A stretch of 63,832 nucleotides of DNA, counting the filler, from Neoconidiobolus thromboides FSU 785 (Eukaryota; Fungi; Entomophthoromycota), in assembly GCA_025603075.1 (NCBI GenBank). It is 9 parts of 9 records of this genome, joined end to end, with 100 filler letters (N's around TTAATTAATTAA, not from the genome) between each part and the next. Parts side by side here need not be neighbours in the genome. Positions count along the whole stretch, not along the records: positions 31,765 to 40,304 come from MU626680.1; 8 more parts are not named here. One strand, 5' to 3'. Position 1 is the stretch's first letter. Every line of letters starts with the position of its first letter. The translations under genes were made by a program, and so were the position numbers. The notes under the pieces are model-generated. The model worked only from the letters and a program-made list of their open reading frames with translations. It did no database searches and was not told the origin of the DNA. Shown piece after piece: positions 12,407 through 40,304 of the stretch.

Positions 12407-12502
12407 GGGGGTTTGTTTTGATTTTATTACTTTTCCATTTTTTAAGCGCTATTTGAGCGGAAAAATTGGTAGTAAAATTCTTAAACACAAAAATACATCT
12501 CC
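12407..12502 (+). mobile_element. MITE copy
   Basis: GGGG...CATCTCC with ATAT on both sides. Confidence 0.85.
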
Positions 12503-13356
12503 ATATATCCAACTACACATCTTTTATCTCGCTTTTTAACTTAGATACACGATGGTTTATTATCGCCTTTTTTATAAAATTTTAAATAGTCAAAAATATT
12601 TAAGAAAAGGGACCAAATATGAATTATTAGAATCCTTTAAATTCTGGGATTAAGATCCAGAGTTTACATTAGTTATAGAAACAAACACTGAATATCCAAA
12701 CATTTTAAAAGTATACTTACTAGTTTAAAGTTAAATTCCAAAATCAATATAAACGAAAGTTATCGAACAACAATTGCTAAAGCCATAGAAACTCGGATCT
12801 GATACCAGAAGTTAGAATTGTATAAAAACTTAAGTCAGGTGATCGAATCTTTGTTAGTTAGCTATTATATTAACTTTGGTGTTTTTAAATAGTAATCAAA
12901 AAACTATTAACAAATAATAGTTAGACTAATACTAATTCTAGATAAAAATTAAAAAACAGAAATAATCAAAATTAACGTGTAAAATTAATACAACTTATAA
13001 CATTTAGCATTCCAGTTTTTCTTACCAGATAAAAAACTGATTTATATGTAATGCAAATAAATTTCAAGACCTTGCTAGTTAAATGCAAACTTTAACAATG
13101 ACAAGTACGTTTATATACTTGATCAAAGGAGTTAGGAAGGTTTTGTTGATATTTGTTAAAAGCTGATTCTATGTTTTTCTATAAGTATTTAATTATGTAC
13201 ATAAACTTAAGATAATATATCATTTTAAGTAAAGCTTCAATTTTATTAAATGTAATACGAAAATCATTATACAATTTATTTATGTTAAGTTGAAATAGAA
13301 AAAAAGATTGATTAAAGAATAGTATCATCAATTTTAATAATAAAAAATGTTTATGA

Positions 13357-31764: not shown

Positions 31765-32486
31765 TCTCATCCTCTCTTTCTAGCGATTCAAGAATCGTAA
31801 ATGGTACTGAAGTTAGTCCAAAGTTCCGCTATCCATTCATGATATCTTTAGATTATCATGGAAAACATGTTTGTGGTGGTACTTTACTCAATAAAAATAC
31901 CGTAGTGACAGCAGCTCACTGTATCAATGCTACTGAATCCGATTGGACTATTTCTTTTCATCGTCACAATATGAATTTAACTAGCTTACAAGAACATGGG
32001 AAAGACTTGAAGATTTTGAAGCGTATCCCACATCCAAAATATTATCTTGGTGAAAGTAGTATAAACTATGATATTGCTATATATAAAATTGAGCCTATAA
32101 AGGGGTTTAATCTTAGATTAAAACTAGATTATAATGATATTTCATCCCAAACTGGTAAAGGTCTTACTGTTTTAGGTTGGGGGAGACTATATGAAGATGG
32201 TCCTTATTCTTATGTTTTAAGACAAGTTGATGTTCCAGTTTATGATATTAACCAATGCAAAATAAGCTATCCCACTTTGGATACTAAATCCCAATTTTGC
32301 GCTGGAAATAAAGATGGTGGTAAAGATTCTTGCCAAGCAGATTCTGGGGGTCCTATTTTAAGCTTTGAAGGTGAACCCACTATAGTAGGTATAGTGTCTT
32401 GGGGTAAGGGTTGTGGTTTGAAAGACTTCCCAGGAATTTATACTAGAATTTCAGCTAGTTTGGATTTTATAAATAAATACCTTTAA
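31765..32486 (+). CDS. Trypsin (S1A) serine protease, 5' partial; Asp189 trypsin specificity
   Basis: DSR/IVNG activation site, TAAHC, NYDIAI, KDSCQADSGGP, VSWG, PGIYTRI. Confidence 0.93.
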
Positions 32487-33437
32487 ATCTAAATACGTTT
32501 TTAGTTAAAATATGCATGAATGTGGATAGTTTTTAGAGTTTAAATACTTTTATATATTGTTCTATTCGAAAAATTAGCTTATATTATATTCTATTCTCAA
32601 GAAGAATACTTATTTCCATATATTCCAGTACAATAACTTTGTATTTTAATAAACTTTACATTATTAAGGCAATATGCATAAATAGTATAGTAAAAATATT
32701 TAGAATTTGTTTGTATTATTAACAGTGTCCTTATTGCGTTTATGGCAAAACAATTTATTATTTAATCTATAATAATTCCAACGATACATCTTAAATATCT
32801 ATGTATAGGTATTTATTCATATACTAATATATTATTAATTACAAATTCATCATTAATAATCATTTAGTTACATATTATATTTTAATGGACCTTGAACACA
32901 AATAATTTCTATAGAAGGCAATTTGTTCTATAATTCAATACGGAAGTTCAATGTACATATATAATAATTAGTAGTTACTTGAAGATGGTTTGGGAATGAC
33001 GATACCTTTGATTAAAAGCAGTAAAGCCATAAATTATTCATGATATTATTATATAATGAAACTATCATAAATCAGCGGGTTTATATATTTTTAACTTATT
33101 TATTTATGCGATTAAAATTATAGCCTTTGTTTTAAATAATTTTATATCAGGTTAGTTTAAATCTAAATATTAAGATCCTTTGTAAAATTTTCAAGTTAAG
33201 CTTAAACAAAACTGAAAAGTTTTATAATTTTAAACAAGTTCTTATAATTATTCATATATAAAGAAATAAGGTTTGAGCTATAATAATGCTAAATTTATGG
33301 CAGTATTTTTTTCAAGAATTGTAGAGCCCTATTTTTATAAGTAATTTTATTATAATTTAGTATATTTTTATTTACAAAGAGTGATGACAAAATGAACGTA
33401 GAGATGAAAAAATCAAAACTAGGAATGAGGAGAAAGT

Positions 33438-34253
33438 CTAAATCAAATTCAAATCTTCATAACATGATAGATGAATAATGGAATGGCTTGACAAACTTAA
33501 CTTTTGTTTTTGTTTTTTCTTGAGCCTTTTAACCCTGCCTGCTCTATCGAAGACATAAGAGTTTCCTAATAGGGCCTTTAAATCCCAATAGAATTCAAAC
33601 CCGTTACAAAAAGAATCTTGGTTTAATTGATACCCTTTTCTTATTTTCTCTTCGCATTTCTTGTACTTTGCTACCAATACTTTCCACCTATTTTTACATT
33701 TTTCTACGCTTCTTTTATATCCATATGTATTTAGCTCATCTACTATGGTTTTCCATAAACTTTGATTTCGGGTTATATTTTCGAATTCTTTTTGGTGTTT
33801 AAGTAAAGTTTTTAAAAATTGACTAGTTTCTTCATATGTCCAATTCTCTGCCCTTCCTCTATTATCTTCAATTAACATATTGGTATAGTTATATTCTTGT
33901 CGATTACTTAACATCACTGAATTCTTTTTTGCTGTTAGTTTATTACTATATTCATAATCGTAGTAACTATTCTCTATAGTAGGTGATTGATAGCTCTGAT
34001 AATAGTTTGCTGGACTTTGTACTTTACAGTAAGGTGACATTGATGTTAATGGATTAGAATGTGCATCCATCAACAATGTGCTAGCACTGCTTGCGTTTAA
34101 ATAATAAATATCACTTGGAATTACTTCTTGGAAATTACTCATAGGCGAATAGTATGGATCATTAAACTGTGGGGACGGCTGATAGTTTAAACTATAATCC
34201 ATTCTTGTAGTCATAGTTTTATCAGTACCATTCGAATAATAAATATGATTCAT
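33438..34253 (-). CDS. Myb/SANT-like trihelix transcription factor
   Basis: NWTYEETSQFL...LWKTIVDEL...RSVEKCKNRWKVLVAKYKK. Confidence 0.85.
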   Translation of the reverse strand: MNHIYYSNGTDKTMTTRMDYSLNYQPSPQFNDPYYSPMSNFQEVIPSDIYYLNASSASTLLMDAHSNPLTSMSPYCKVQSPANYYQSYQSPTIENSYYDYEYSNKLTAKKNSVMLSNRQEYNYTNMLIEDNRGRAENWTYEETSQFLKTLLKHQKEFENITRNQSLWKTIVDELNTYGYKRSVEKCKNRWKVLVAKYKKCEEKIRKGYQLNQDSFCNGFEFYWDLKALLGNSYVFDRAGRVKRLKKKQKQKLSLSSHSIIHLSCYEDLNLI

Positions 34254-34913
34254 TTTTTTATTGTATTATTTTTAATTTTCAATTATTTTTTTATATTTAT
34301 ATATATTTTTGAGCATACCTACTTTAATGCTTATGAGAAAAAGCCTCTTTAAAGGACTCCCGTCATCTGACAATTACTGCCCATAAAACATTATATTTTT
34401 AGCTGAGAAATTTTATAAGCTAAAAACAAGGCTATGAAGAGTATAAAAAACTAATTTTACTTTCAATGATAACTTATTCTTTTTCCTCATATTTTATGTA
34501 TTTTTTAACTATGTGATGAAACATTTAGGATATAGTTTCAATATCTTATTGATGTTTGGTAATCTTAAATTTAACTAATGCTCTCTTACATTTATAGAGG
34601 CTTTAAAACAAGCAGTAATAAGCCTATAATAAAATTAAATTATGAGAATAGTAGCGCATTAAATTCCTGAATTAAACAAGCTTTTTAATGTACAAATTTT
34701 AATATTAATTAATATCAATTGTCAGACAAATAGTACATAAAATTAAGACAAGCATAATTTATTAATTTGAAACCGCTAAAATTTTCTGGAAAAACATGTC
34801 TCAAGTACACTTTCAATTTTTAATTTTGGCTATTTCCTTTTAAAGATATACTTTTGCTAACATATTTTATTACTTCCGAACTTTGTCTCAATTTAAAATG
34901 TTATTTAGTAAAT

Positions 34914-35004
34914 GGGGATATATTTTAAGAATTTTACTAATAATCTTTCCATTCAAACAGCGCTTAAAAAATAGAAAGTGATGAAACCAAAAAAAAACAT
35001 TCCT
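34914..35004 (-). mobile_element. MITE copy (internally shortened)
   Basis: GGGGATA...CATTCCT with the family core. Confidence 0.75.
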
Positions 35005-35984
35005 AATATTTAGTAATTTAACAAATAGTTATTTTTATTGTGAATTTTTTTATAATAAATATAATACACTTAATATAGCAGCATTACTTAAGTACCTATT
35101 TATACCATTTATTATTATGTTTAGTCAGAATAAATATAACAAAGTAGTATTTTCAATATTTTAATATTAATAAAAGCATGAATAGTTCAGAGAAAGCAGT
35201 GGTATATTTAGTAATACTCAACTTTTATGCGTCGAAAGTAAAATTAAATTTATGCTATTAAATTCATGTATTAAATTACTTTTAAACATAATGAATTTGA
35301 AACTGGGGTTTGTACTTTATATTATCTCAAAGGTAAAGTTACTTATTAGGGTATTTTCATAAACCATCTATTGATTGATAGGTACCATAGGTTATTTTAT
35401 TATCTGCTTATTCTTATGACTATATGGTCTTAAAGTAGTACTCTATTTTAACAGTTCGGTCATTTAAAGGATAGTATGTACATTTATTCTATAATTATCA
35501 ATTATTAAAATATTTTGTTATGTTTATGATGTACTTGATTGGCTATTTTAACACATTATTAAAATTAATAAATCAATAGTTGAGAAGAAAACCTCAAGTT
35601 GTAAACTGTGTATGATAATTTAATGCTATTAAAAATTTCTGTATTAATTTGATTTAGGGTAATATTGTGATAGAGCATGGGTTGAAAGTGGGGGTCTTGT
35701 AATATATTTAATGTATAAAAGTATTTATACAAATACACTAATTCTTAGATCAACATTCTCACAAAACTTCAATTCTTGCTTTAAAGCCATATTATATGCT
35801 CTTATATTTTAATATAATTGTATAGAGGTATTAAATATAGTTTAATTTATTAATTTAGAAATTTTTACTAAATAAATACTTGCTTATATAATCAATAAGA
35901 GATTTATAATTTTTATAGTTTGTTTATTAAATTAATAGTAAATAATTCTTTTTTTAAAAGCGCTGATATAAAGTATTAAATGAT

Positions 35985-36290
35985 AATATCATGTTATCAA
36001 CTACCGCTTATGTAAGAGGTGGTATAATATAAATATAGATACACCAGCAGTGAGTAAATACACTGTAATATAAAACCAAGAGAAAAGTGCACTAGATGTG
36101 CATATGTGCTTTCTAGCTCATACTACCAGATTATGAGATCATAGGATATGAAAAGAAGGTTCAAAAGCAAAATTTGTATACTGTTGATTGAGCTTGAAGT
36201 GCTATAGTTGGCATCCTGATACTTGTATAAAAGTTATTCCGTACATTAACGATTAACGGTAGATAAAGAGTGCTTGACCGAGACATTAAT
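35985..36290 (-). pseudogene. Decayed multi-TM membrane protein (GPCR-like) fragment
   Basis: One frame reads ...KHICTSSALFSWFYITVYLLTAGVSIFILYHLL with several in-frame stops upstream. Confidence 0.3.
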
Positions 36291-36506
36291 AAAAAAGTTT
36301 ATCTGTGAGCTATAACAAATAAACATAGGAAGTTTTTCATAGTATAGTTGCATTCTTATCAATTATCTTATTTTAAAATGATTATTAAATTAAGTCGTTG
36401 GGATAAATTAACTGAAAATTTGAAAATTAATCAGATTTTCATACCCATAAAAATCTAAAAATCTTTATTTCACCATTAGATATTTTAAAAAATGAAATTA
36501 TAATAT

Positions 36507-36604
36507 GGGGATGTATTTGTGTGTTTAAGAATTTTACTAACAAATTTTTCGCTTAAATAGTGCTTAAAAATGGAAAAAATAATAGAGTCAAAAAAAACAC
36601 TCCC
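36507..36604 (-). mobile_element. MITE copy
   Basis: GGGGATG...CACTCCC, ATAT/ATGT flanks. Confidence 0.85.
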
Positions 36605-37737
36605 ATGTGTTTTATTAATTCTACATGCTGTCCTAGCAATAGGTCATATATATCCCTAACGTTAATATCATGACTAATTAGCGCGTCGCGAAGCTAGATA
36701 AAGATATAATATTATTGATATATATGGCTTTGGAAATTATAGTTTAGTTTTATATTTTTTCTCTGTTCTGAAATGTATTTTTCAATGTATTTTTTGTGAA
36801 GTTAAATTATAATGCATCAGAGTATTTAATATTTGATACTAAAGGCATAATTCTTAACGTTATAGTCTATATTATGTATTGTGGTATTAAAGTTTATTAA
36901 CTGTAGATGAAAACTTGTTTTTTATCTTTTTATTTTTGGAGTACAAAAGTTAGATGAAGAATTAAAAAATTGTGCAAGAGATTTCTTCCTAGTCCTAAAA
37001 GGAATTCATTTAAAGGACCAAAAAAAAAAAGTATCAGGGTATTGACGATTGCTCAGAAGGTTAATTTACTGCTTCTTACTCTAGATAAAGCTTATGTAAA
37101 TAGATGTAACAAATTGTTTATAAATGTTACTTTAAGTTTTTTGATTATTTTGATAGGATTCTTATTCAGCTTTAAATTAAAAATTGTAGTTTTTCCTCAT
37201 GCCCATTTAGGTATAAAGATCATTCAAATAAATAAAATATCAAAGTTAATATAGAACTCAACTTGTTTTATGATATTTAAACAGATTATAAAAATTTACG
37301 AAACCTAATCGCTAATGATTGTATTTTTTAAAGTTTCAGTTAAAACTTTGACTTTGCTTTTTATACCATATTGCATTCCTAGTTGTCCTTTTTTAATAAT
37401 GTTGGGCTTTTAAAGGTTTATAAAGGTAGTGTAGTAGTTCCCTTCCTCATCAACTTTTATTAACTTAATTTTACTCTGATATAAAATAAAATAAAATAAA
37501 ATAAAATAAAAATGTAGTAAGGTATGTAAGAAAACAAATATGGAGTACCTAAGTTTGGAAAAAAACAAATAAAAAAAATCCTCCGAGTATGAGGAAAAGC
37601 CCTATATTACTTAAACTACTTTATGGACTCAAAACAAATAACTGAAAATGAACAGCCCATAGTTTATTTATAGAATTGTACCTTTTAAAAGTATGAACAA
37701 AAAGCAGTGTTAACTTTAAATCGTGATTTTAACATAT

Positions 37738-37834
37738 GAGGATGTATTTTTGTGTTCAAGAATTTTACTAACAATTCCCCGCTTAAATAGTGCTTAAAAT
37801 ATGTAAAAGTAATGAAGTCAGAAAAAACATCCCC
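37738..37834 (-). mobile_element. MITE copy
   Basis: GAGGATG...CATCCCC, ATAT/ATAT flanks. Confidence 0.85.
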
Positions 37835-39067
37835 ATATATATTCATTTTAGAATATCAGCTCTGAAAAAGAATAACTCAACTTCAATTAATTTAACTATA
37901 TTTGAATTAGAAAATAATGTCTAGATTATATGCACGAAATCTTAAGTAATATTTTATTGTGTGTGAAGTATTACATTATTAAAAATTATACCAATGATAA
38001 TAAACTAAATGAACATAATTGATGTTTTAGTATCTCATTTAAGAAATTACTACTAACATAATTCAAATATGATTTTTCTTATATAACTTGATGGTTTTAT
38101 AAATTAATTATCGTCATGCAATTAGTAAGATCTTAGTTACAGCAGCATTTAATTTATGAGACTATGAATTATGTAATAAAAATCATGTTTTAATTACATC
38201 GATAGTATGTTAAAAGACATATATGCTTTTAATTTTAATTTTAATTTTATGTGATATTAAGCTTTGAGACTATATTTATTGATTTATATAGGTAAGTTTA
38301 AAAGCTTGGTCAAAATCAAGGATAAACCTTCTCTTTCATTTTTTCTTGTCCATCAGTTTATATAGCGTAAATTTTTGAAAAATAAATACTAGATAGAAAA
38401 AGTTTCAATATGAATTATTTTAAAATTAAGCAAAAAAAACAAATATTTTGTAGCACTAAGTGCTTAATTCGCAATTTTTGCTGAAATTAAATTGAACAAA
38501 AATTAAACCAAGCTTTCAAACTAACCCATATTTAAAGTCAAGGCTAAGCCATTTACTATGCATAAATAATAAATAATTAAAATCCAAAATTTTAAGTAAA
38601 TAAAAGTAGGCTGCATAGTAGCATAAAATGCATCAATAATTTTATGTATCAATACTTTTATGCATAGTTTGTGTTTTATAAATAGCCTCTATATTTTTTT
38701 AGTTATCAAAATCGTCCTAATATAGTCTTTCTGTTTATTTTTCATTAATCATTGATATTTGCCATATTAAATAGTTTTCTCATTGTCATAACTCATATTA
38801 TAATTGGTGTTATAAACTAGTATGAAAAATGTATCTTTAAAATTAATTCAGTATCTTTAAAGAGTTTTAATTTTATTAACATGTCCTCTAAAAATTTAAA
38901 AATAAAAATAAAATTAAAATTCAGATGATTCATATCAGCTATTTTAAAATAAGACAGGTATAATTAATTTACAAGGCTATAAAACGTAATTAATGTTAAA
39001 TAAAATTAGCGAACTATTAATAAGAATTATTGAGTAAAAGTATTCAAACTTCTAACTTTATAGCATT

Positions 39068-39156
39068 GGGAGTGTTTTTTTCCTGTTTTAATATTACTAT
39101 TTTTGATTCTTCATTTGACAAAAAGGAATAAATAAATGAAACCAAAAGACATTCTC
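39068..39156 (-). mobile_element. Highly degenerate MITE copy
   Basis: GGGAGTG...AATGAAACCAAAAGACATTCTC ends; interior diverged. Confidence 0.45.
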
Positions 39157-39582
39157 ATTAATTTTTAAATTTACGATTTAAAACTTAGAGTCAATAGATT
39201 TAATAAAGACAATTATATGAAAAATTATATGCACATTTCTGTTAATATTATCAACTTGTTTTTCTTTAAAATATGCTTTATCTGATATTCTAACTTAATA
39301 AACGTTCTCCCAGACACGCAATTTATAAAAATATACTCATAAGTCAAAGCTTATTATAGCTTTAAATTTTTTATAATGCACGTTTGCTATTAGTCTGATA
39401 TTTTAAAAAACAAGTTGATAAAAGAGTATAAAAATAAAAAGCTAGAACCTTTAAAATATAGGCATTTTTAAACTTTTATATTAACATTTCACCTTTTTTT
39501 ATATAAATTAAATTAATTCCTAAATCAAATAATTAACACATACCTTTAATAAAACAATTAAGGCTCTAATGGCTTTCTGAAT

Positions 39583-40304
39583 TTATGCATATTTATTGAT
39601 AAAATCCACACTAGTTGAAATTCTAGTAAACACAGCAGGGTAATCTTTTAAAGCACAACCCTTACCCCAAGACACTATACCTACTATAGTGGGTTCACCT
39701 TCAAAGCTTAAAATAGGACCCCCAGAATCGGCCTGACATACGTTTTTCCAACCTTCTTTATAGCCAGCACAAAACTGTGATCCGGTATCTAAGAGAGGAT
39801 AGCTTATTTTGCATTGGTTAATATCATAAACTGGAACATCAACTTGTCTTAAAACATAAGAATAAGGACCATCTTCATATAGTCTCCCCCAACCTAAAAC
39901 AGTAAGACCTTTACCAGTTTGGGATGAAATATCATTATAATCTAGTTTTAATCTAAGATTAAACCCCTTTATAGGCTCAATTTTATATATAGCAATATCA
40001 TAGTTTATACTACTTTCACCAAGATAATATTTTGGATGTGGGATACGCTTCAAAATCTTCAAGTCTTTCCCATGTTCTTGTAAGCTAGTTAAATTCATAT
40101 TGTGACGATGAAAAGAAATAGTCCAATCGGATTCAGTAGCATTGATACAGTGAGCTGCTGTCACTACGGTATTTTTATTGAGTAAAGTACCACCACAAAC
40201 ATGTTTTCCATGATAATCTAAAGATATCATGAATGGATAGCGGAACTTTGGACTAACTTCAGTACCATTTACGATTCTTGAATCGCTAGAAAGAGAGGAT
40301 GAGA
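39583..40304 (-). CDS. Trypsin-family (S1A) protease paralog, 5' partial; Asn189/Ala226 pocket
   Basis: Same triad motifs as 31765-32486 but KNVCQADSGG and PAVFTRI. Confidence 0.93.

What the first reader, a model, noticed from the sequence alone, without database searches (positions are those of the whole stretch)
31765..40304. Inverted trypsin pair identical everywhere except the two S1-specificity loops
Seen: the genes face each other across 7.1 kb. They are identical for ~505 nt (31765-32272), then strongly diverged for ~70 nt (32273-32339, about 10 synonymous changes in 23 codons). They are identical again for ~76 nt (32340-32415), then diverged to the stop. The diverged patches encode GNKDGGKDSC versus GYKEGWKNVC and GLKDFPGIY versus ALKDYPAVF. 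Established: residues 189 and 226 and these two loops set S1 specificity, and D189/G226 is tryptic. Inference: N189/A226 is non-tryptic (chymotrypsin-like); gene conversion homogenises the scaffold while selection protects old specificity cassettes. Recombination in the identical arms would invert the segment and swap specificity modules between two promoters/propeptides, a shufflon-like switch. Both also have Ala for Gly193.
Basis: partly seen in the sequence, partly recalled or inferred. Interest (0 to 1): 0.78.

Follow-up and report, generated by a model that had tools for sequence, protein, structure and literature searches.

The report
Mosaic inverted fungal trypsin gene pair
Two tail-to-tail trypsin-family protease genes of the insect-associated fungus Neoconidiobolus thromboides share most of their sequence but differ in two old stretches around the substrate pocket; this is a clear but ordinary case of gene conversion between paralogs, not a DNA switch.

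Summary
The piece is the whole 8,540-bp scaffold MU626680.1 of Neoconidiobolus thromboides FSU 785. It carries two convergent S1A (trypsin-family) genes. They are identical for 508 nt, differ at 24 sites over 67 nt, are identical for 76 nt, then differ at 17 sites up to the stop.

Two other scaffolds (MU626401.1, MU626699.1) carry the two 5' ends and stop at the last base of the same 508 nt. That arm is therefore one unresolved repeat printed on four scaffold ends. Its perfect identity is not independently shown, and the assembly does not say which promoter belongs to which 3' end.

Gene conversion is well supported. Synonymous sites are saturated in the patches (pS 0.92 and 0.55) and unchanged in the arm and island. 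Promoters are alignable for only about 100-200 nt, and the 3' flanks not at all.

Copy A keeps tryptic D189/S190/G226/Y228. Copy B has W188/N189/V190/A226/F228, seen in none of 119 homologs, so it is probably non-tryptic.

Nothing supports a shufflon-like switch. There is no recombinase, and orientation cannot be tested here. A convergent M14 peptidase pair in the same genome shows similar patchy identity. Verdict: new member of a known kind, with modest interest.

The parts
31765..32486 (+). Copy A: S1A trypsin-like protease gene, cut at its 5' end by the scaffold edge. Frame starts at 31767 and the stop is 32484-32486. Mature enzyme starts IVNG after ...DSR. Has D189/S190/G216/G226/Y228 and A193.
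   Evidence: (PF00089, E 5.4e-49)
39583..40304 (-). Copy B: paralogous S1A protease gene, cut at its 5' end by the other scaffold edge. Stop is 39583-39585. Has W188/N189/V190/G216/A226/F228 and A193. Catalytic triad and cysteines are intact.
   Evidence: (E 5.5e-47)
31765..32272 (+). Left copy of the 508-nt identical arm (signal-peptide end, propeptide, residues 16-173). The same 508 nt end scaffolds MU626401.1 and MU626699.1.
39797..40304 (-). Right copy of the 508-nt identical arm.
32273..32339 (+). Diverged patch 1 of copy A (residues 173-193: end of the 170s loop, loop 1, 189-192). 24 nt differences, pS 0.92, pN 0.20. Counterpart in copy B is 39730-39796 (-).
32340..32415 (+). 76-nt identical island (D194-S195 ... 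W215-G216 ... C220). Counterpart is 39654-39729 (-).
   Evidence: permutation 0/200,000
32416..32483 (+). Diverged patch 2 of copy A (residues 221 to C-terminus: loop 2, 226-228). pS 0.55, pN 0.16. Counterpart is 39586-39653 (-).
32487..39582 (.). 7.1-kb AT-rich unique spacer (about 20-31% GC by sliding 500-nt window) between the two stop codons. No recombinase ORF, tRNA or Rfam family. Holds one Myb/SANT gene and three copies of a dispersed ~105-nt repeat.
33438..34253 (-). Myb/SANT-like DNA-binding protein gene (271 aa) inside the spacer.
   Evidence: (PF13837, E 9e-14)

Best explanation
The locus is an old inverted (convergent) duplicate pair of secreted S1A trypsin-like protease genes in Neoconidiobolus thromboides. 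Interlocus gene conversion has recently made two stretches the same: codons from the end of the signal peptide to residue 173 (508 nt), and codons 194-220 (76 nt). The promoters, the first 11 codons, residues 173-193, residues 221 to the C-terminus and both flanks keep old divergence.

The unconverted coding patches carry the floor and walls of the S1 pocket. Copy A keeps the ancestral tryptic pocket (D189, S190, G226, Y228). Copy B has a derived, uncharged, more hydrophobic pocket (W188, N189, V190, A226, F228). It is predicted to have lost Arg/Lys preference and may prefer Tyr/Phe/Leu/Gln-type P1 residues.

Both zymogens keep the same Arg-Ile activation bond, so a tryptic enzyme such as copy A could activate both.

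Shown: the mosaic, its statistics, the family assignment, the residue states and the scaffold topology. Inferred: conversion as the mechanism, selection as a reason the patches persist, and the specificity of copy B.

The scaffold breaks at both ends because the 508-nt arm is a repeat the assembler could not cross. This is no evidence for or against inversion.
For: - Identity of the piece and organism.
- Mosaic. The arm has 0/508 differences and the island 0/76. Patch 1 has pS 0.92 and patch 2 has pS 0.55.
- Island significance: (0/200,000 permutations).
- Diverged homologous sequence on the 5' side of the arm. The signal peptides differ at 3 of 11 residues, with 5 nt differences. The region -100..-1 is 68% identical against a 42% null. 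Nothing is alignable beyond about -200.
- No homology 3' of the stops.
- Purifying selection in the patches: Sd 20.8 of 28.2 sites against Nd 19.2 of 106.8 sites, Fisher P 2e-8.
- In the patches A and B are 67% identical in protein. That is no closer than A is to trypsins of other genera (63-70%).
- No closer donor among ten other trypsin genes or gene fragments of the genome that were fetched (67-71% nt).
- Copy B's five pocket states occur in 0 of 119 homologs, while D189, G226 and Y228 are in 119/119.
- N189 is the S1-floor residue of chymotryptic KLK7 (PMC3014083).
- A convergent M14 carboxypeptidase pair on MU626486.1 shows the same kind of patchy identity. It has nt-identical runs of 177, 99, 95 and 63 nt in a gene with diverged ends. 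Conversion between inverted peptidase paralogs therefore recurs in this genome.
Against: - The 508-nt identity is read from one collapsed graph node present on four scaffold ends. A few real differences between the copies could have been merged.
- Any unconverted 3' third of an S1A gene must contain residues 189-228. The overlap of the patches with specificity loops is therefore partly unavoidable and does not prove selection.
- No ortholog with copy B's pocket was found, so the age of that cassette rests on synonymous saturation alone.
- No expression or enzymatic data exist.
- A193 in both copies may lower activity. However, A193 also occurs in 9 of 119 homologs.
Confidence: 0.8

Rival explanations
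1. Chimeric origin. The pair is a young whole-gene inverted duplication. The two diverged patches (and the 5' end) of one copy were later overwritten by ectopic conversion from a distant paralog that is unannotated, lost or on unsampled scaffolds.
For: In the patches A and B are as far apart as trypsins of different genera. Synonymous sites are saturated, as expected if a patch came from a distant family member. The family is large and clustered.
Against: It needs at least three separate imports: promoter and signal region, patch 1, and patch 2. None of the ten other trypsin genes or gene fragments fetched is closer than 71% nt to either patch. Copy B's pocket states are absent from 119 homologs. 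Both copies carry derived states within the patches. Conversion from a donor only about 70% identical is mechanistically unlikely.
Confidence: 0.1
2. Assembly artefact. The long identical arm is a consensus of two merely similar paralogs collapsed by the assembler, so scaffold homogenisation is overstated.
For: All four scaffold ends stop at the exact boundaries of the 508 nt. This is the signature of a single repeat node. Isolated SNPs inside it could have been merged.
Against: The assembler kept the copies apart wherever they differ, and broke at the first differing base on both sides. Sequences several per cent apart would not normally collapse. The 76-nt island lies inside continuous scaffold sequence and is independent of the collapse. 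The mosaic stays even if a few SNPs are hidden.
Confidence: 0.12
3. Invertible switch. Recombination between the identical arms flips the 7.1-kb segment often enough that both isomers coexist. This swaps the tryptic and non-tryptic 3' modules between two differently regulated promoters.
For: A perfect 508-nt inverted repeat 7.1 kb apart is a substrate for homologous recombination. The conversion that made the arms identical is mechanistically linked to occasional crossover, which here means inversion. The two promoters are strongly diverged. The assembly left the linkage unresolved.
Against: The segment has no recombinase gene and no specific sites. Any 508-nt repeat breaks a short-read assembly, so the unresolved linkage carries no information. 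Spontaneous inversion at such repeats is rare (own knowledge). The two 5' parts differ only in promoter and three signal-peptide residues. A similar patchy pair (M14) suggests a general recombination background, not a dedicated device.
Confidence: 0.03

Closest known systems
Trypsin-like serine proteases of Entomophthoromycotina (e.g. Zoophthora radicans Q5I8R5; other Neoconidiobolus thromboides, Pandora, Entomophthora and Conidiobolus coronatus paralogs)
   Same: Same Pfam family (PF00089) and same length. Short signal peptide plus propeptide ending in Arg before I-V-x-G, three disulfides, and genes in multi-copy clusters.
   Different: Only 42-53% identical to the pair. All 25 nearest fungal relatives have D189/G226/Y228, whereas copy B has N189/A226/F228.
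Concerted evolution of duplicated genes with locally retained divergence (own knowledge: RHD/RHCE, primate red/green opsins; in S1A proteases, rat kallikrein gene conversion, Wines et al. 1991, listed in the references of PMC3114847)
   Same: Identical conversion tracts are interrupted by short, old, function-determining segments. The paralogs are physically close.
   Different: This is a fungal secreted protease pair in inverted orientation. The retained segments are the S1-pocket walls. Population data to show selection are lacking.
KLK7 (stratum corneum chymotryptic enzyme) and other S1A enzymes lacking D189
   Same: Asn at position 189 on the S1 floor with a hydrophobic residue at 190. KLK7 prefers Tyr/Phe/Gln at P1 (PMC3014083).
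   Different: Unrelated lineage. Copy B also has A226, F228 and W188, whose combined effect is unknown. No assay has been done.
Invertible DNA switches (bacterial shufflons and Hin/Gin-type segments; yeast 2-micron FLP; plastid inverted-repeat flip-flop; own knowledge)
   Same: Inverted repeats flank a segment whose inversion would re-pair 5' and 3' gene parts.
   Different: No recombinase and no short specific sites. Both orientations have not been observed. The repeat is ordinary coding sequence.

Membership tests
S1A (chymotrypsin/trypsin fold) serine proteases, Pfam PF00089 | Significant full-length match to the family profile | tested here: met
   E 5.4e-49 and 5.5e-47, profile positions 1-220 of 220; 537 PDB sequences matched, best E 6e-37.
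S1A (chymotrypsin/trypsin fold) serine proteases, Pfam PF00089 | Catalytic triad H57, D102, S195, plus D194 and the I16 N-terminus created by cleavage after Arg | tested here: met
   H, D and S are in the invariant columns (119/119 homologs) in both copies. The sequence ...DSR then IVNG is present.
S1A (chymotrypsin/trypsin fold) serine proteases, Pfam PF00089 | Oxyanion-hole Gly193 | tested here: not met
   Both copies have Ala193. 107 of 119 homologs have Gly and 9 of 119 have Ala. This is a minority state within the family and does not bar membership.
Trypsins in the narrow sense (Arg/Lys P1 specificity) | D189 with G216 and G226 | tested here: met
   This row is for copy A only: D189, G216, G226. 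The activity itself was not tested.
Trypsins in the narrow sense (Arg/Lys P1 specificity) | D189 with G216 and G226 (copy B) | tested here: not met
   Copy B has N189, V190, G216, A226. It should not be filed as a trypsin by specificity.
Interlocus gene conversion tract between paralogs | Identical segment bounded on both sides by homologous but diverged sequence, longer than chance allows | tested here: met
   The 508-nt arm lies between the diverged signal-peptide/promoter region and patch 1. The 76-nt island lies between patches 1 and 2 (permutation 0/200,000).
Interlocus gene conversion tract between paralogs | Both copies independently sequenced across the tract | not testable with these tools
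   The arm is one repeat node on four scaffold ends. No reads are available.
Shufflon-like or other programmed invertible switch | Dedicated recombinase encoded at or near the segment | tested here: not met
   the only ORFs of 60 aa or more in the spacer are a Myb/SANT protein and an unsupported 94-aa ORF.
Shufflon-like or other programmed invertible switch | Both orientations present in one isolate | not testable with these tools
   The assembly is compatible with either linkage of MU626401.1 and MU626699.1 to the two 3' ends.

The most novel reading that the evidence does not exclude
The perfect 508-nt inverted arms could recombine often enough in the multinucleate mycelium that both inversion isomers coexist. 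The tryptic and non-tryptic specificity modules would then be exchanged between two differently regulated promoters. That would be a recombinase-free eukaryotic flip-flop giving population-level variation in secreted protease specificity. The unresolved scaffold linkage would then reflect true heterogeneity.
Probability: 0.04. Interest if true: 0.7.

Novelty: new member of a known kind. Interest (0 to 1): 0.3.

Why it matters
This is a clean example, in an early-diverging insect-associated fungus, of how a secreted protease family can gain a new substrate pocket while the rest of the protein stays tied to its paralog by gene conversion. It offers a natural pocket-swap pair: identical over residues 16-173 and 194-220, with 15 residue differences, all in residues 174-190 and 221 to the C-terminus. 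The two enzymes could be expressed and compared directly.

It is also a practical warning. The perfectly identical arm and the open scaffold ends come from one unresolved repeat. Neither the perfect identity nor any inversion can be read from this assembly.

Tried and rejected
- A region-restricted word search with copy B's C-terminal 80 residues found only the window's own protein cluster (P0001).
- A JGI metagenome scan with copy B found no relative.
- I looked for a donor of either patch in ten other N. thromboides trypsin genes or gene fragments on four scaffolds. None was closer than 71% nt.
- I tested whether the short scaffold MU626873.1 and the trypsin fragment at the end of MU626630.1 form a second shared-repeat junction. 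They do not (88% over 256 nt).
- I searched the literature for the sequencing and assembly method of strain FSU 785, to judge whether read pairs should have bridged 508 nt. It is not stated in the papers found.
- tRNA and Rfam scans of the spacer were empty.
- The first ungapped comparison of the M14 pair was meaningless because of a one-codon offset. It was replaced.
It was rerun with index references only.
- I left out structure prediction and the large representative search. Family assignment and residue mapping were already unambiguous.
Full report
**What the piece is.** Positions 31765-40304 are the complete scaffold MU626680.1 (8,540 bp) of assembly GCA_025603075.1, Neoconidiobolus thromboides FSU 785. 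This is an entomophthoralean (Zoopagomycota) fungus. The DNA is AT-rich, with about 20-25% GC in most non-coding windows and about 33% in the trypsin genes. Its deposited annotation has three genes: two 5'-partial trypsins of 231 residues each and a 271-residue Myb/SANT-like protein. It is not human. No spliced model was needed, because the gene models are single exons.

**Check of the observation.**
- The inverted arms are 31765-32488 and 39581-40304, with 7,092 nt between them. The genes are convergent.
- In the pairwise alignment, the first 508 nt (31765-32272) are identical.
- The next 67 nt (32273-32339) carry 24 differences in 23 codons: 10 codons with synonymous change only and 7 replacement codons.
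- The next 76 nt (32340-32415) are identical.
- The rest up to the stop carries 17 differences.
- Beyond the stop codons the two sides are not alignable above a shuffled control.
- The island is not chance. None of 200,000 permutations of the 41 differences over the 3' 211 nt gave an internal identical run of 76 nt. The island has 0 changes at 19 synonymous sites, while the flanking patches have pS 0.74.

The scaffold starts and ends inside the two genes. The 90%-identity protein cluster of the window's proteins has two more members from the same genome. Both are 179-residue partial trypsins.
- They lie at the very ends of scaffolds MU626401.1 (50,109 bp) and MU626699.1 (7,710 bp).
- Each carries a start codon, a signal peptide (the two differ at 3 of the first 11 residues) and then the same 508 nt. 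Each scaffold stops at the last identical base before patch 1.
- Conversely, the window scaffold starts one base after the last difference between those two 5' ends.
- The 508 nt is therefore a single unresolved repeat with two ways in and two ways out, printed on four scaffold ends.

Three consequences follow.
- There are two full-length genes, not two truncated ones.
- The perfect identity of the long arm is not an independent observation of two copies. A few real differences could have been merged.
- The assembly fits either linkage of the two 5' ends to the two 3' ends. These are exactly the two inversion isomers. Any repeat longer than the read or insert span produces this picture, so it carries no information about inversion.

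**Age of the duplication and the case for conversion.**
- Upstream of the start codons the two 5' scaffolds are 68% identical in -100..-1 (shuffled control 42%). They are marginal in -200..-101 and unalignable further out.
- Synonymous sites are saturated in patch 1 (13.3 changes at 14.5 sites, pS 0.92) and heavily changed in patch 2 (pS 0.55). Replacement divergence is pN 0.20 and 0.16.
- The excess of synonymous over replacement change is significant (Fisher P 2e-8). Both versions of the patches have therefore been under purifying selection.
- In the patch columns, A and B are 67% identical in protein. That is no closer than copy A is to trypsins of other genera (63-70%).
- An island of complete identity with old, homologous, diverged sequence on both sides is the signature of interlocus gene conversion.
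- The lower divergence of the first 11 codons (5 nt differences in 33) hints at older, longer tracts on the 5' side. This is an inference from very few sites.

**Was a patch imported from a third paralog?** I fetched ten other trypsin genes or gene fragments of this genome on four scaffolds. The best nucleotide identity to either 3' part was 67-71%. A word search restricted to copy B's C-terminal 80 residues, and a metagenome scan, found nothing closer. Within the patches both copies carry derived states: copy A at 184A, 186, 221 and 227, and copy B at 188, 189, 190, 226 and 228. This fits long separate histories better than one recent import. Import is not excluded, because the whole genome could not be searched.

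**The proteins.** Both are S1A proteases (PF00089, E about 1e-47 to 1e-49; closest solved structures are factor IXa and trypsins, E about 1e-36).
- The triad, D194, three disulfides and the Arg-Ile activation bond are intact in both.
- By alignment to 119 homologs, copy A has D189, S190, G216, G226 and Y228, the family's tryptic pocket.
- Copy B has W188, N189, V190, A226 and F228. None of these five states occurs in any of the 119 homologs. D189, G226 and Y228 are invariant in them.
- Asn189 forms the S1 floor of the chymotryptic kallikrein KLK7, which prefers Tyr, Phe or Gln at P1 (PMC3014083).
- From my own knowledge, not tested here: A226 is the chymase state, and G226A weakens trypsin.
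- Loss of Arg/Lys preference in copy B is therefore a reasonable inference. 'Chymotrypsin-like' is a guess at what replaces it.
- Ala193 in both copies is confirmed. It also occurs in 9 of 119 homologs, including two Entomophthora muscae proteins, so it is a tolerated minority state.
- Because the activation site lies in the identical arm, a tryptic enzyme such as copy A could activate both zymogens (inference).

**Does selection protect the cassettes?** The patches coincide with residues 173-193 and 221 to the C-terminus. These include loop 1, 189-192, loop 2 and 226-228. The identical island holds S195 and 214-220. Two cautions apply.
- Any unconverted 3' third of an S1A gene must contain these determinants.
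- Once a segment is 35% diverged, it blocks heteroduplex formation by itself, so persistence does not need continuing selection.

The feature that most needs explaining is the 76-nt island between two saturated patches. It requires a separate short tract, a discontinuous tract, or removal by selection of convertants that lost one pocket. The data here cannot choose among these.

**The switch idea.** The spacer holds no recombinase gene, tRNA or Rfam family. It contains the Myb/SANT gene and three copies of a dispersed short repeat. Homologous recombination between 508-nt inverted repeats can invert the segment, and the conversion that made them identical implies occasional crossovers. Past or rare inversion is therefore likely in principle (inference). 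A programmed or frequent switch has no support. Its effect would be limited to exchanging promoters and three signal-peptide residues.

**Context in the same genome.**
- Trypsin genes sit in clusters of two to four.
- On MU626486.1 a convergent pair of M14 carboxypeptidase genes (both 413 residues, 82% identical) shows the same kind of patchwork. It has nucleotide-identical runs of 177, 99, 95 and 63 nt in the middle of the gene, with diverged ends and unalignable flanks.
- Patchy conversion between inverted secreted-peptidase paralogs is thus a recurrent, general process here, not a device special to the trypsin pocket.

**Comparison with what is known, and verdict.** Gene conversion among S1A paralogs has been studied before: rodent kallikreins in PMC3114847, whose reference list includes Wines et al. 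1991 on the rat family. Local retention of function-determining differences within converting duplicates is textbook (RHD/RHCE, opsins; own knowledge). This locus is a tidy new instance in an early-diverging fungus. It has an unusual derived pocket in one copy, which makes a good natural experiment for S1 specificity. It is not a new kind of system. Interest is 0.3.

Nothing in this work called for a referred step.

Noticed in passing
window about 36503-36608, about 37734-37838, and a partial copy near 34892-34990; also many sites in L001, L002, L004-L006: A dispersed repeat of about 105 nt with perfect 12-nt terminal inverted repeats in the consensus (ATATGGGGATGT ... ACATCCCCATAT), so MITE-like. 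There are 24 copies in 70.8 kb of sampled N. thromboides sequence, about one per 3 kb, always intergenic. The parent transposon was not identified.
   Followed up: partly
L004:3853-5094 (+) and L004:6364-7605 (-) (scaffold MU626486.1): A convergent pair of M14 carboxypeptidase genes 1.3 kb apart, 82% identical in protein. It has nt-identical blocks of 177, 99, 95 and 63 nt in the centre with diverged ends. This is a second mosaic inverted peptidase pair in the same genome.
   Followed up: partly
L001:10001-10539 and L002:7172-7710 (ends of scaffolds MU626401.1 and MU626699.1): The missing 5' ends (promoter, ATG, signal peptide) of the two trypsin genes lie here. Joining the three scaffolds would give a locus of about 65 kb, but the linkage of each 5' end to copy A or B is unresolved.
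   Followed up: yes
window 33438-34253 (-): A Myb/SANT-like (PF13837) DNA-binding protein gene is the only other gene in the 7.1-kb spacer. Its N-terminal half is low-complexity and rich in Ser, Tyr and Asn. Any relation to transposon-derived Myb proteins was not examined.
   Followed up: no
L004 (three genes), L005 (four, one cut by the scaffold end at 12475-12705), L006 (two): Trypsin-like genes of N. thromboides occur in same-strand clusters next to other secreted proteins (M14 peptidases, polysaccharide deacetylase, cerato-platanin). One more scaffold ends inside a trypsin gene.
   Followed up: partly
window 32337-32339 and 39730-39732 (codon 193): Ala replaces the oxyanion-hole Gly193 in both copies, encoded by different codons (GCA and GCC). 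The same state occurs in 9 of 119 homologs from fungi, actinobacteria and a beetle, so it has arisen repeatedly.
   Followed up: partly
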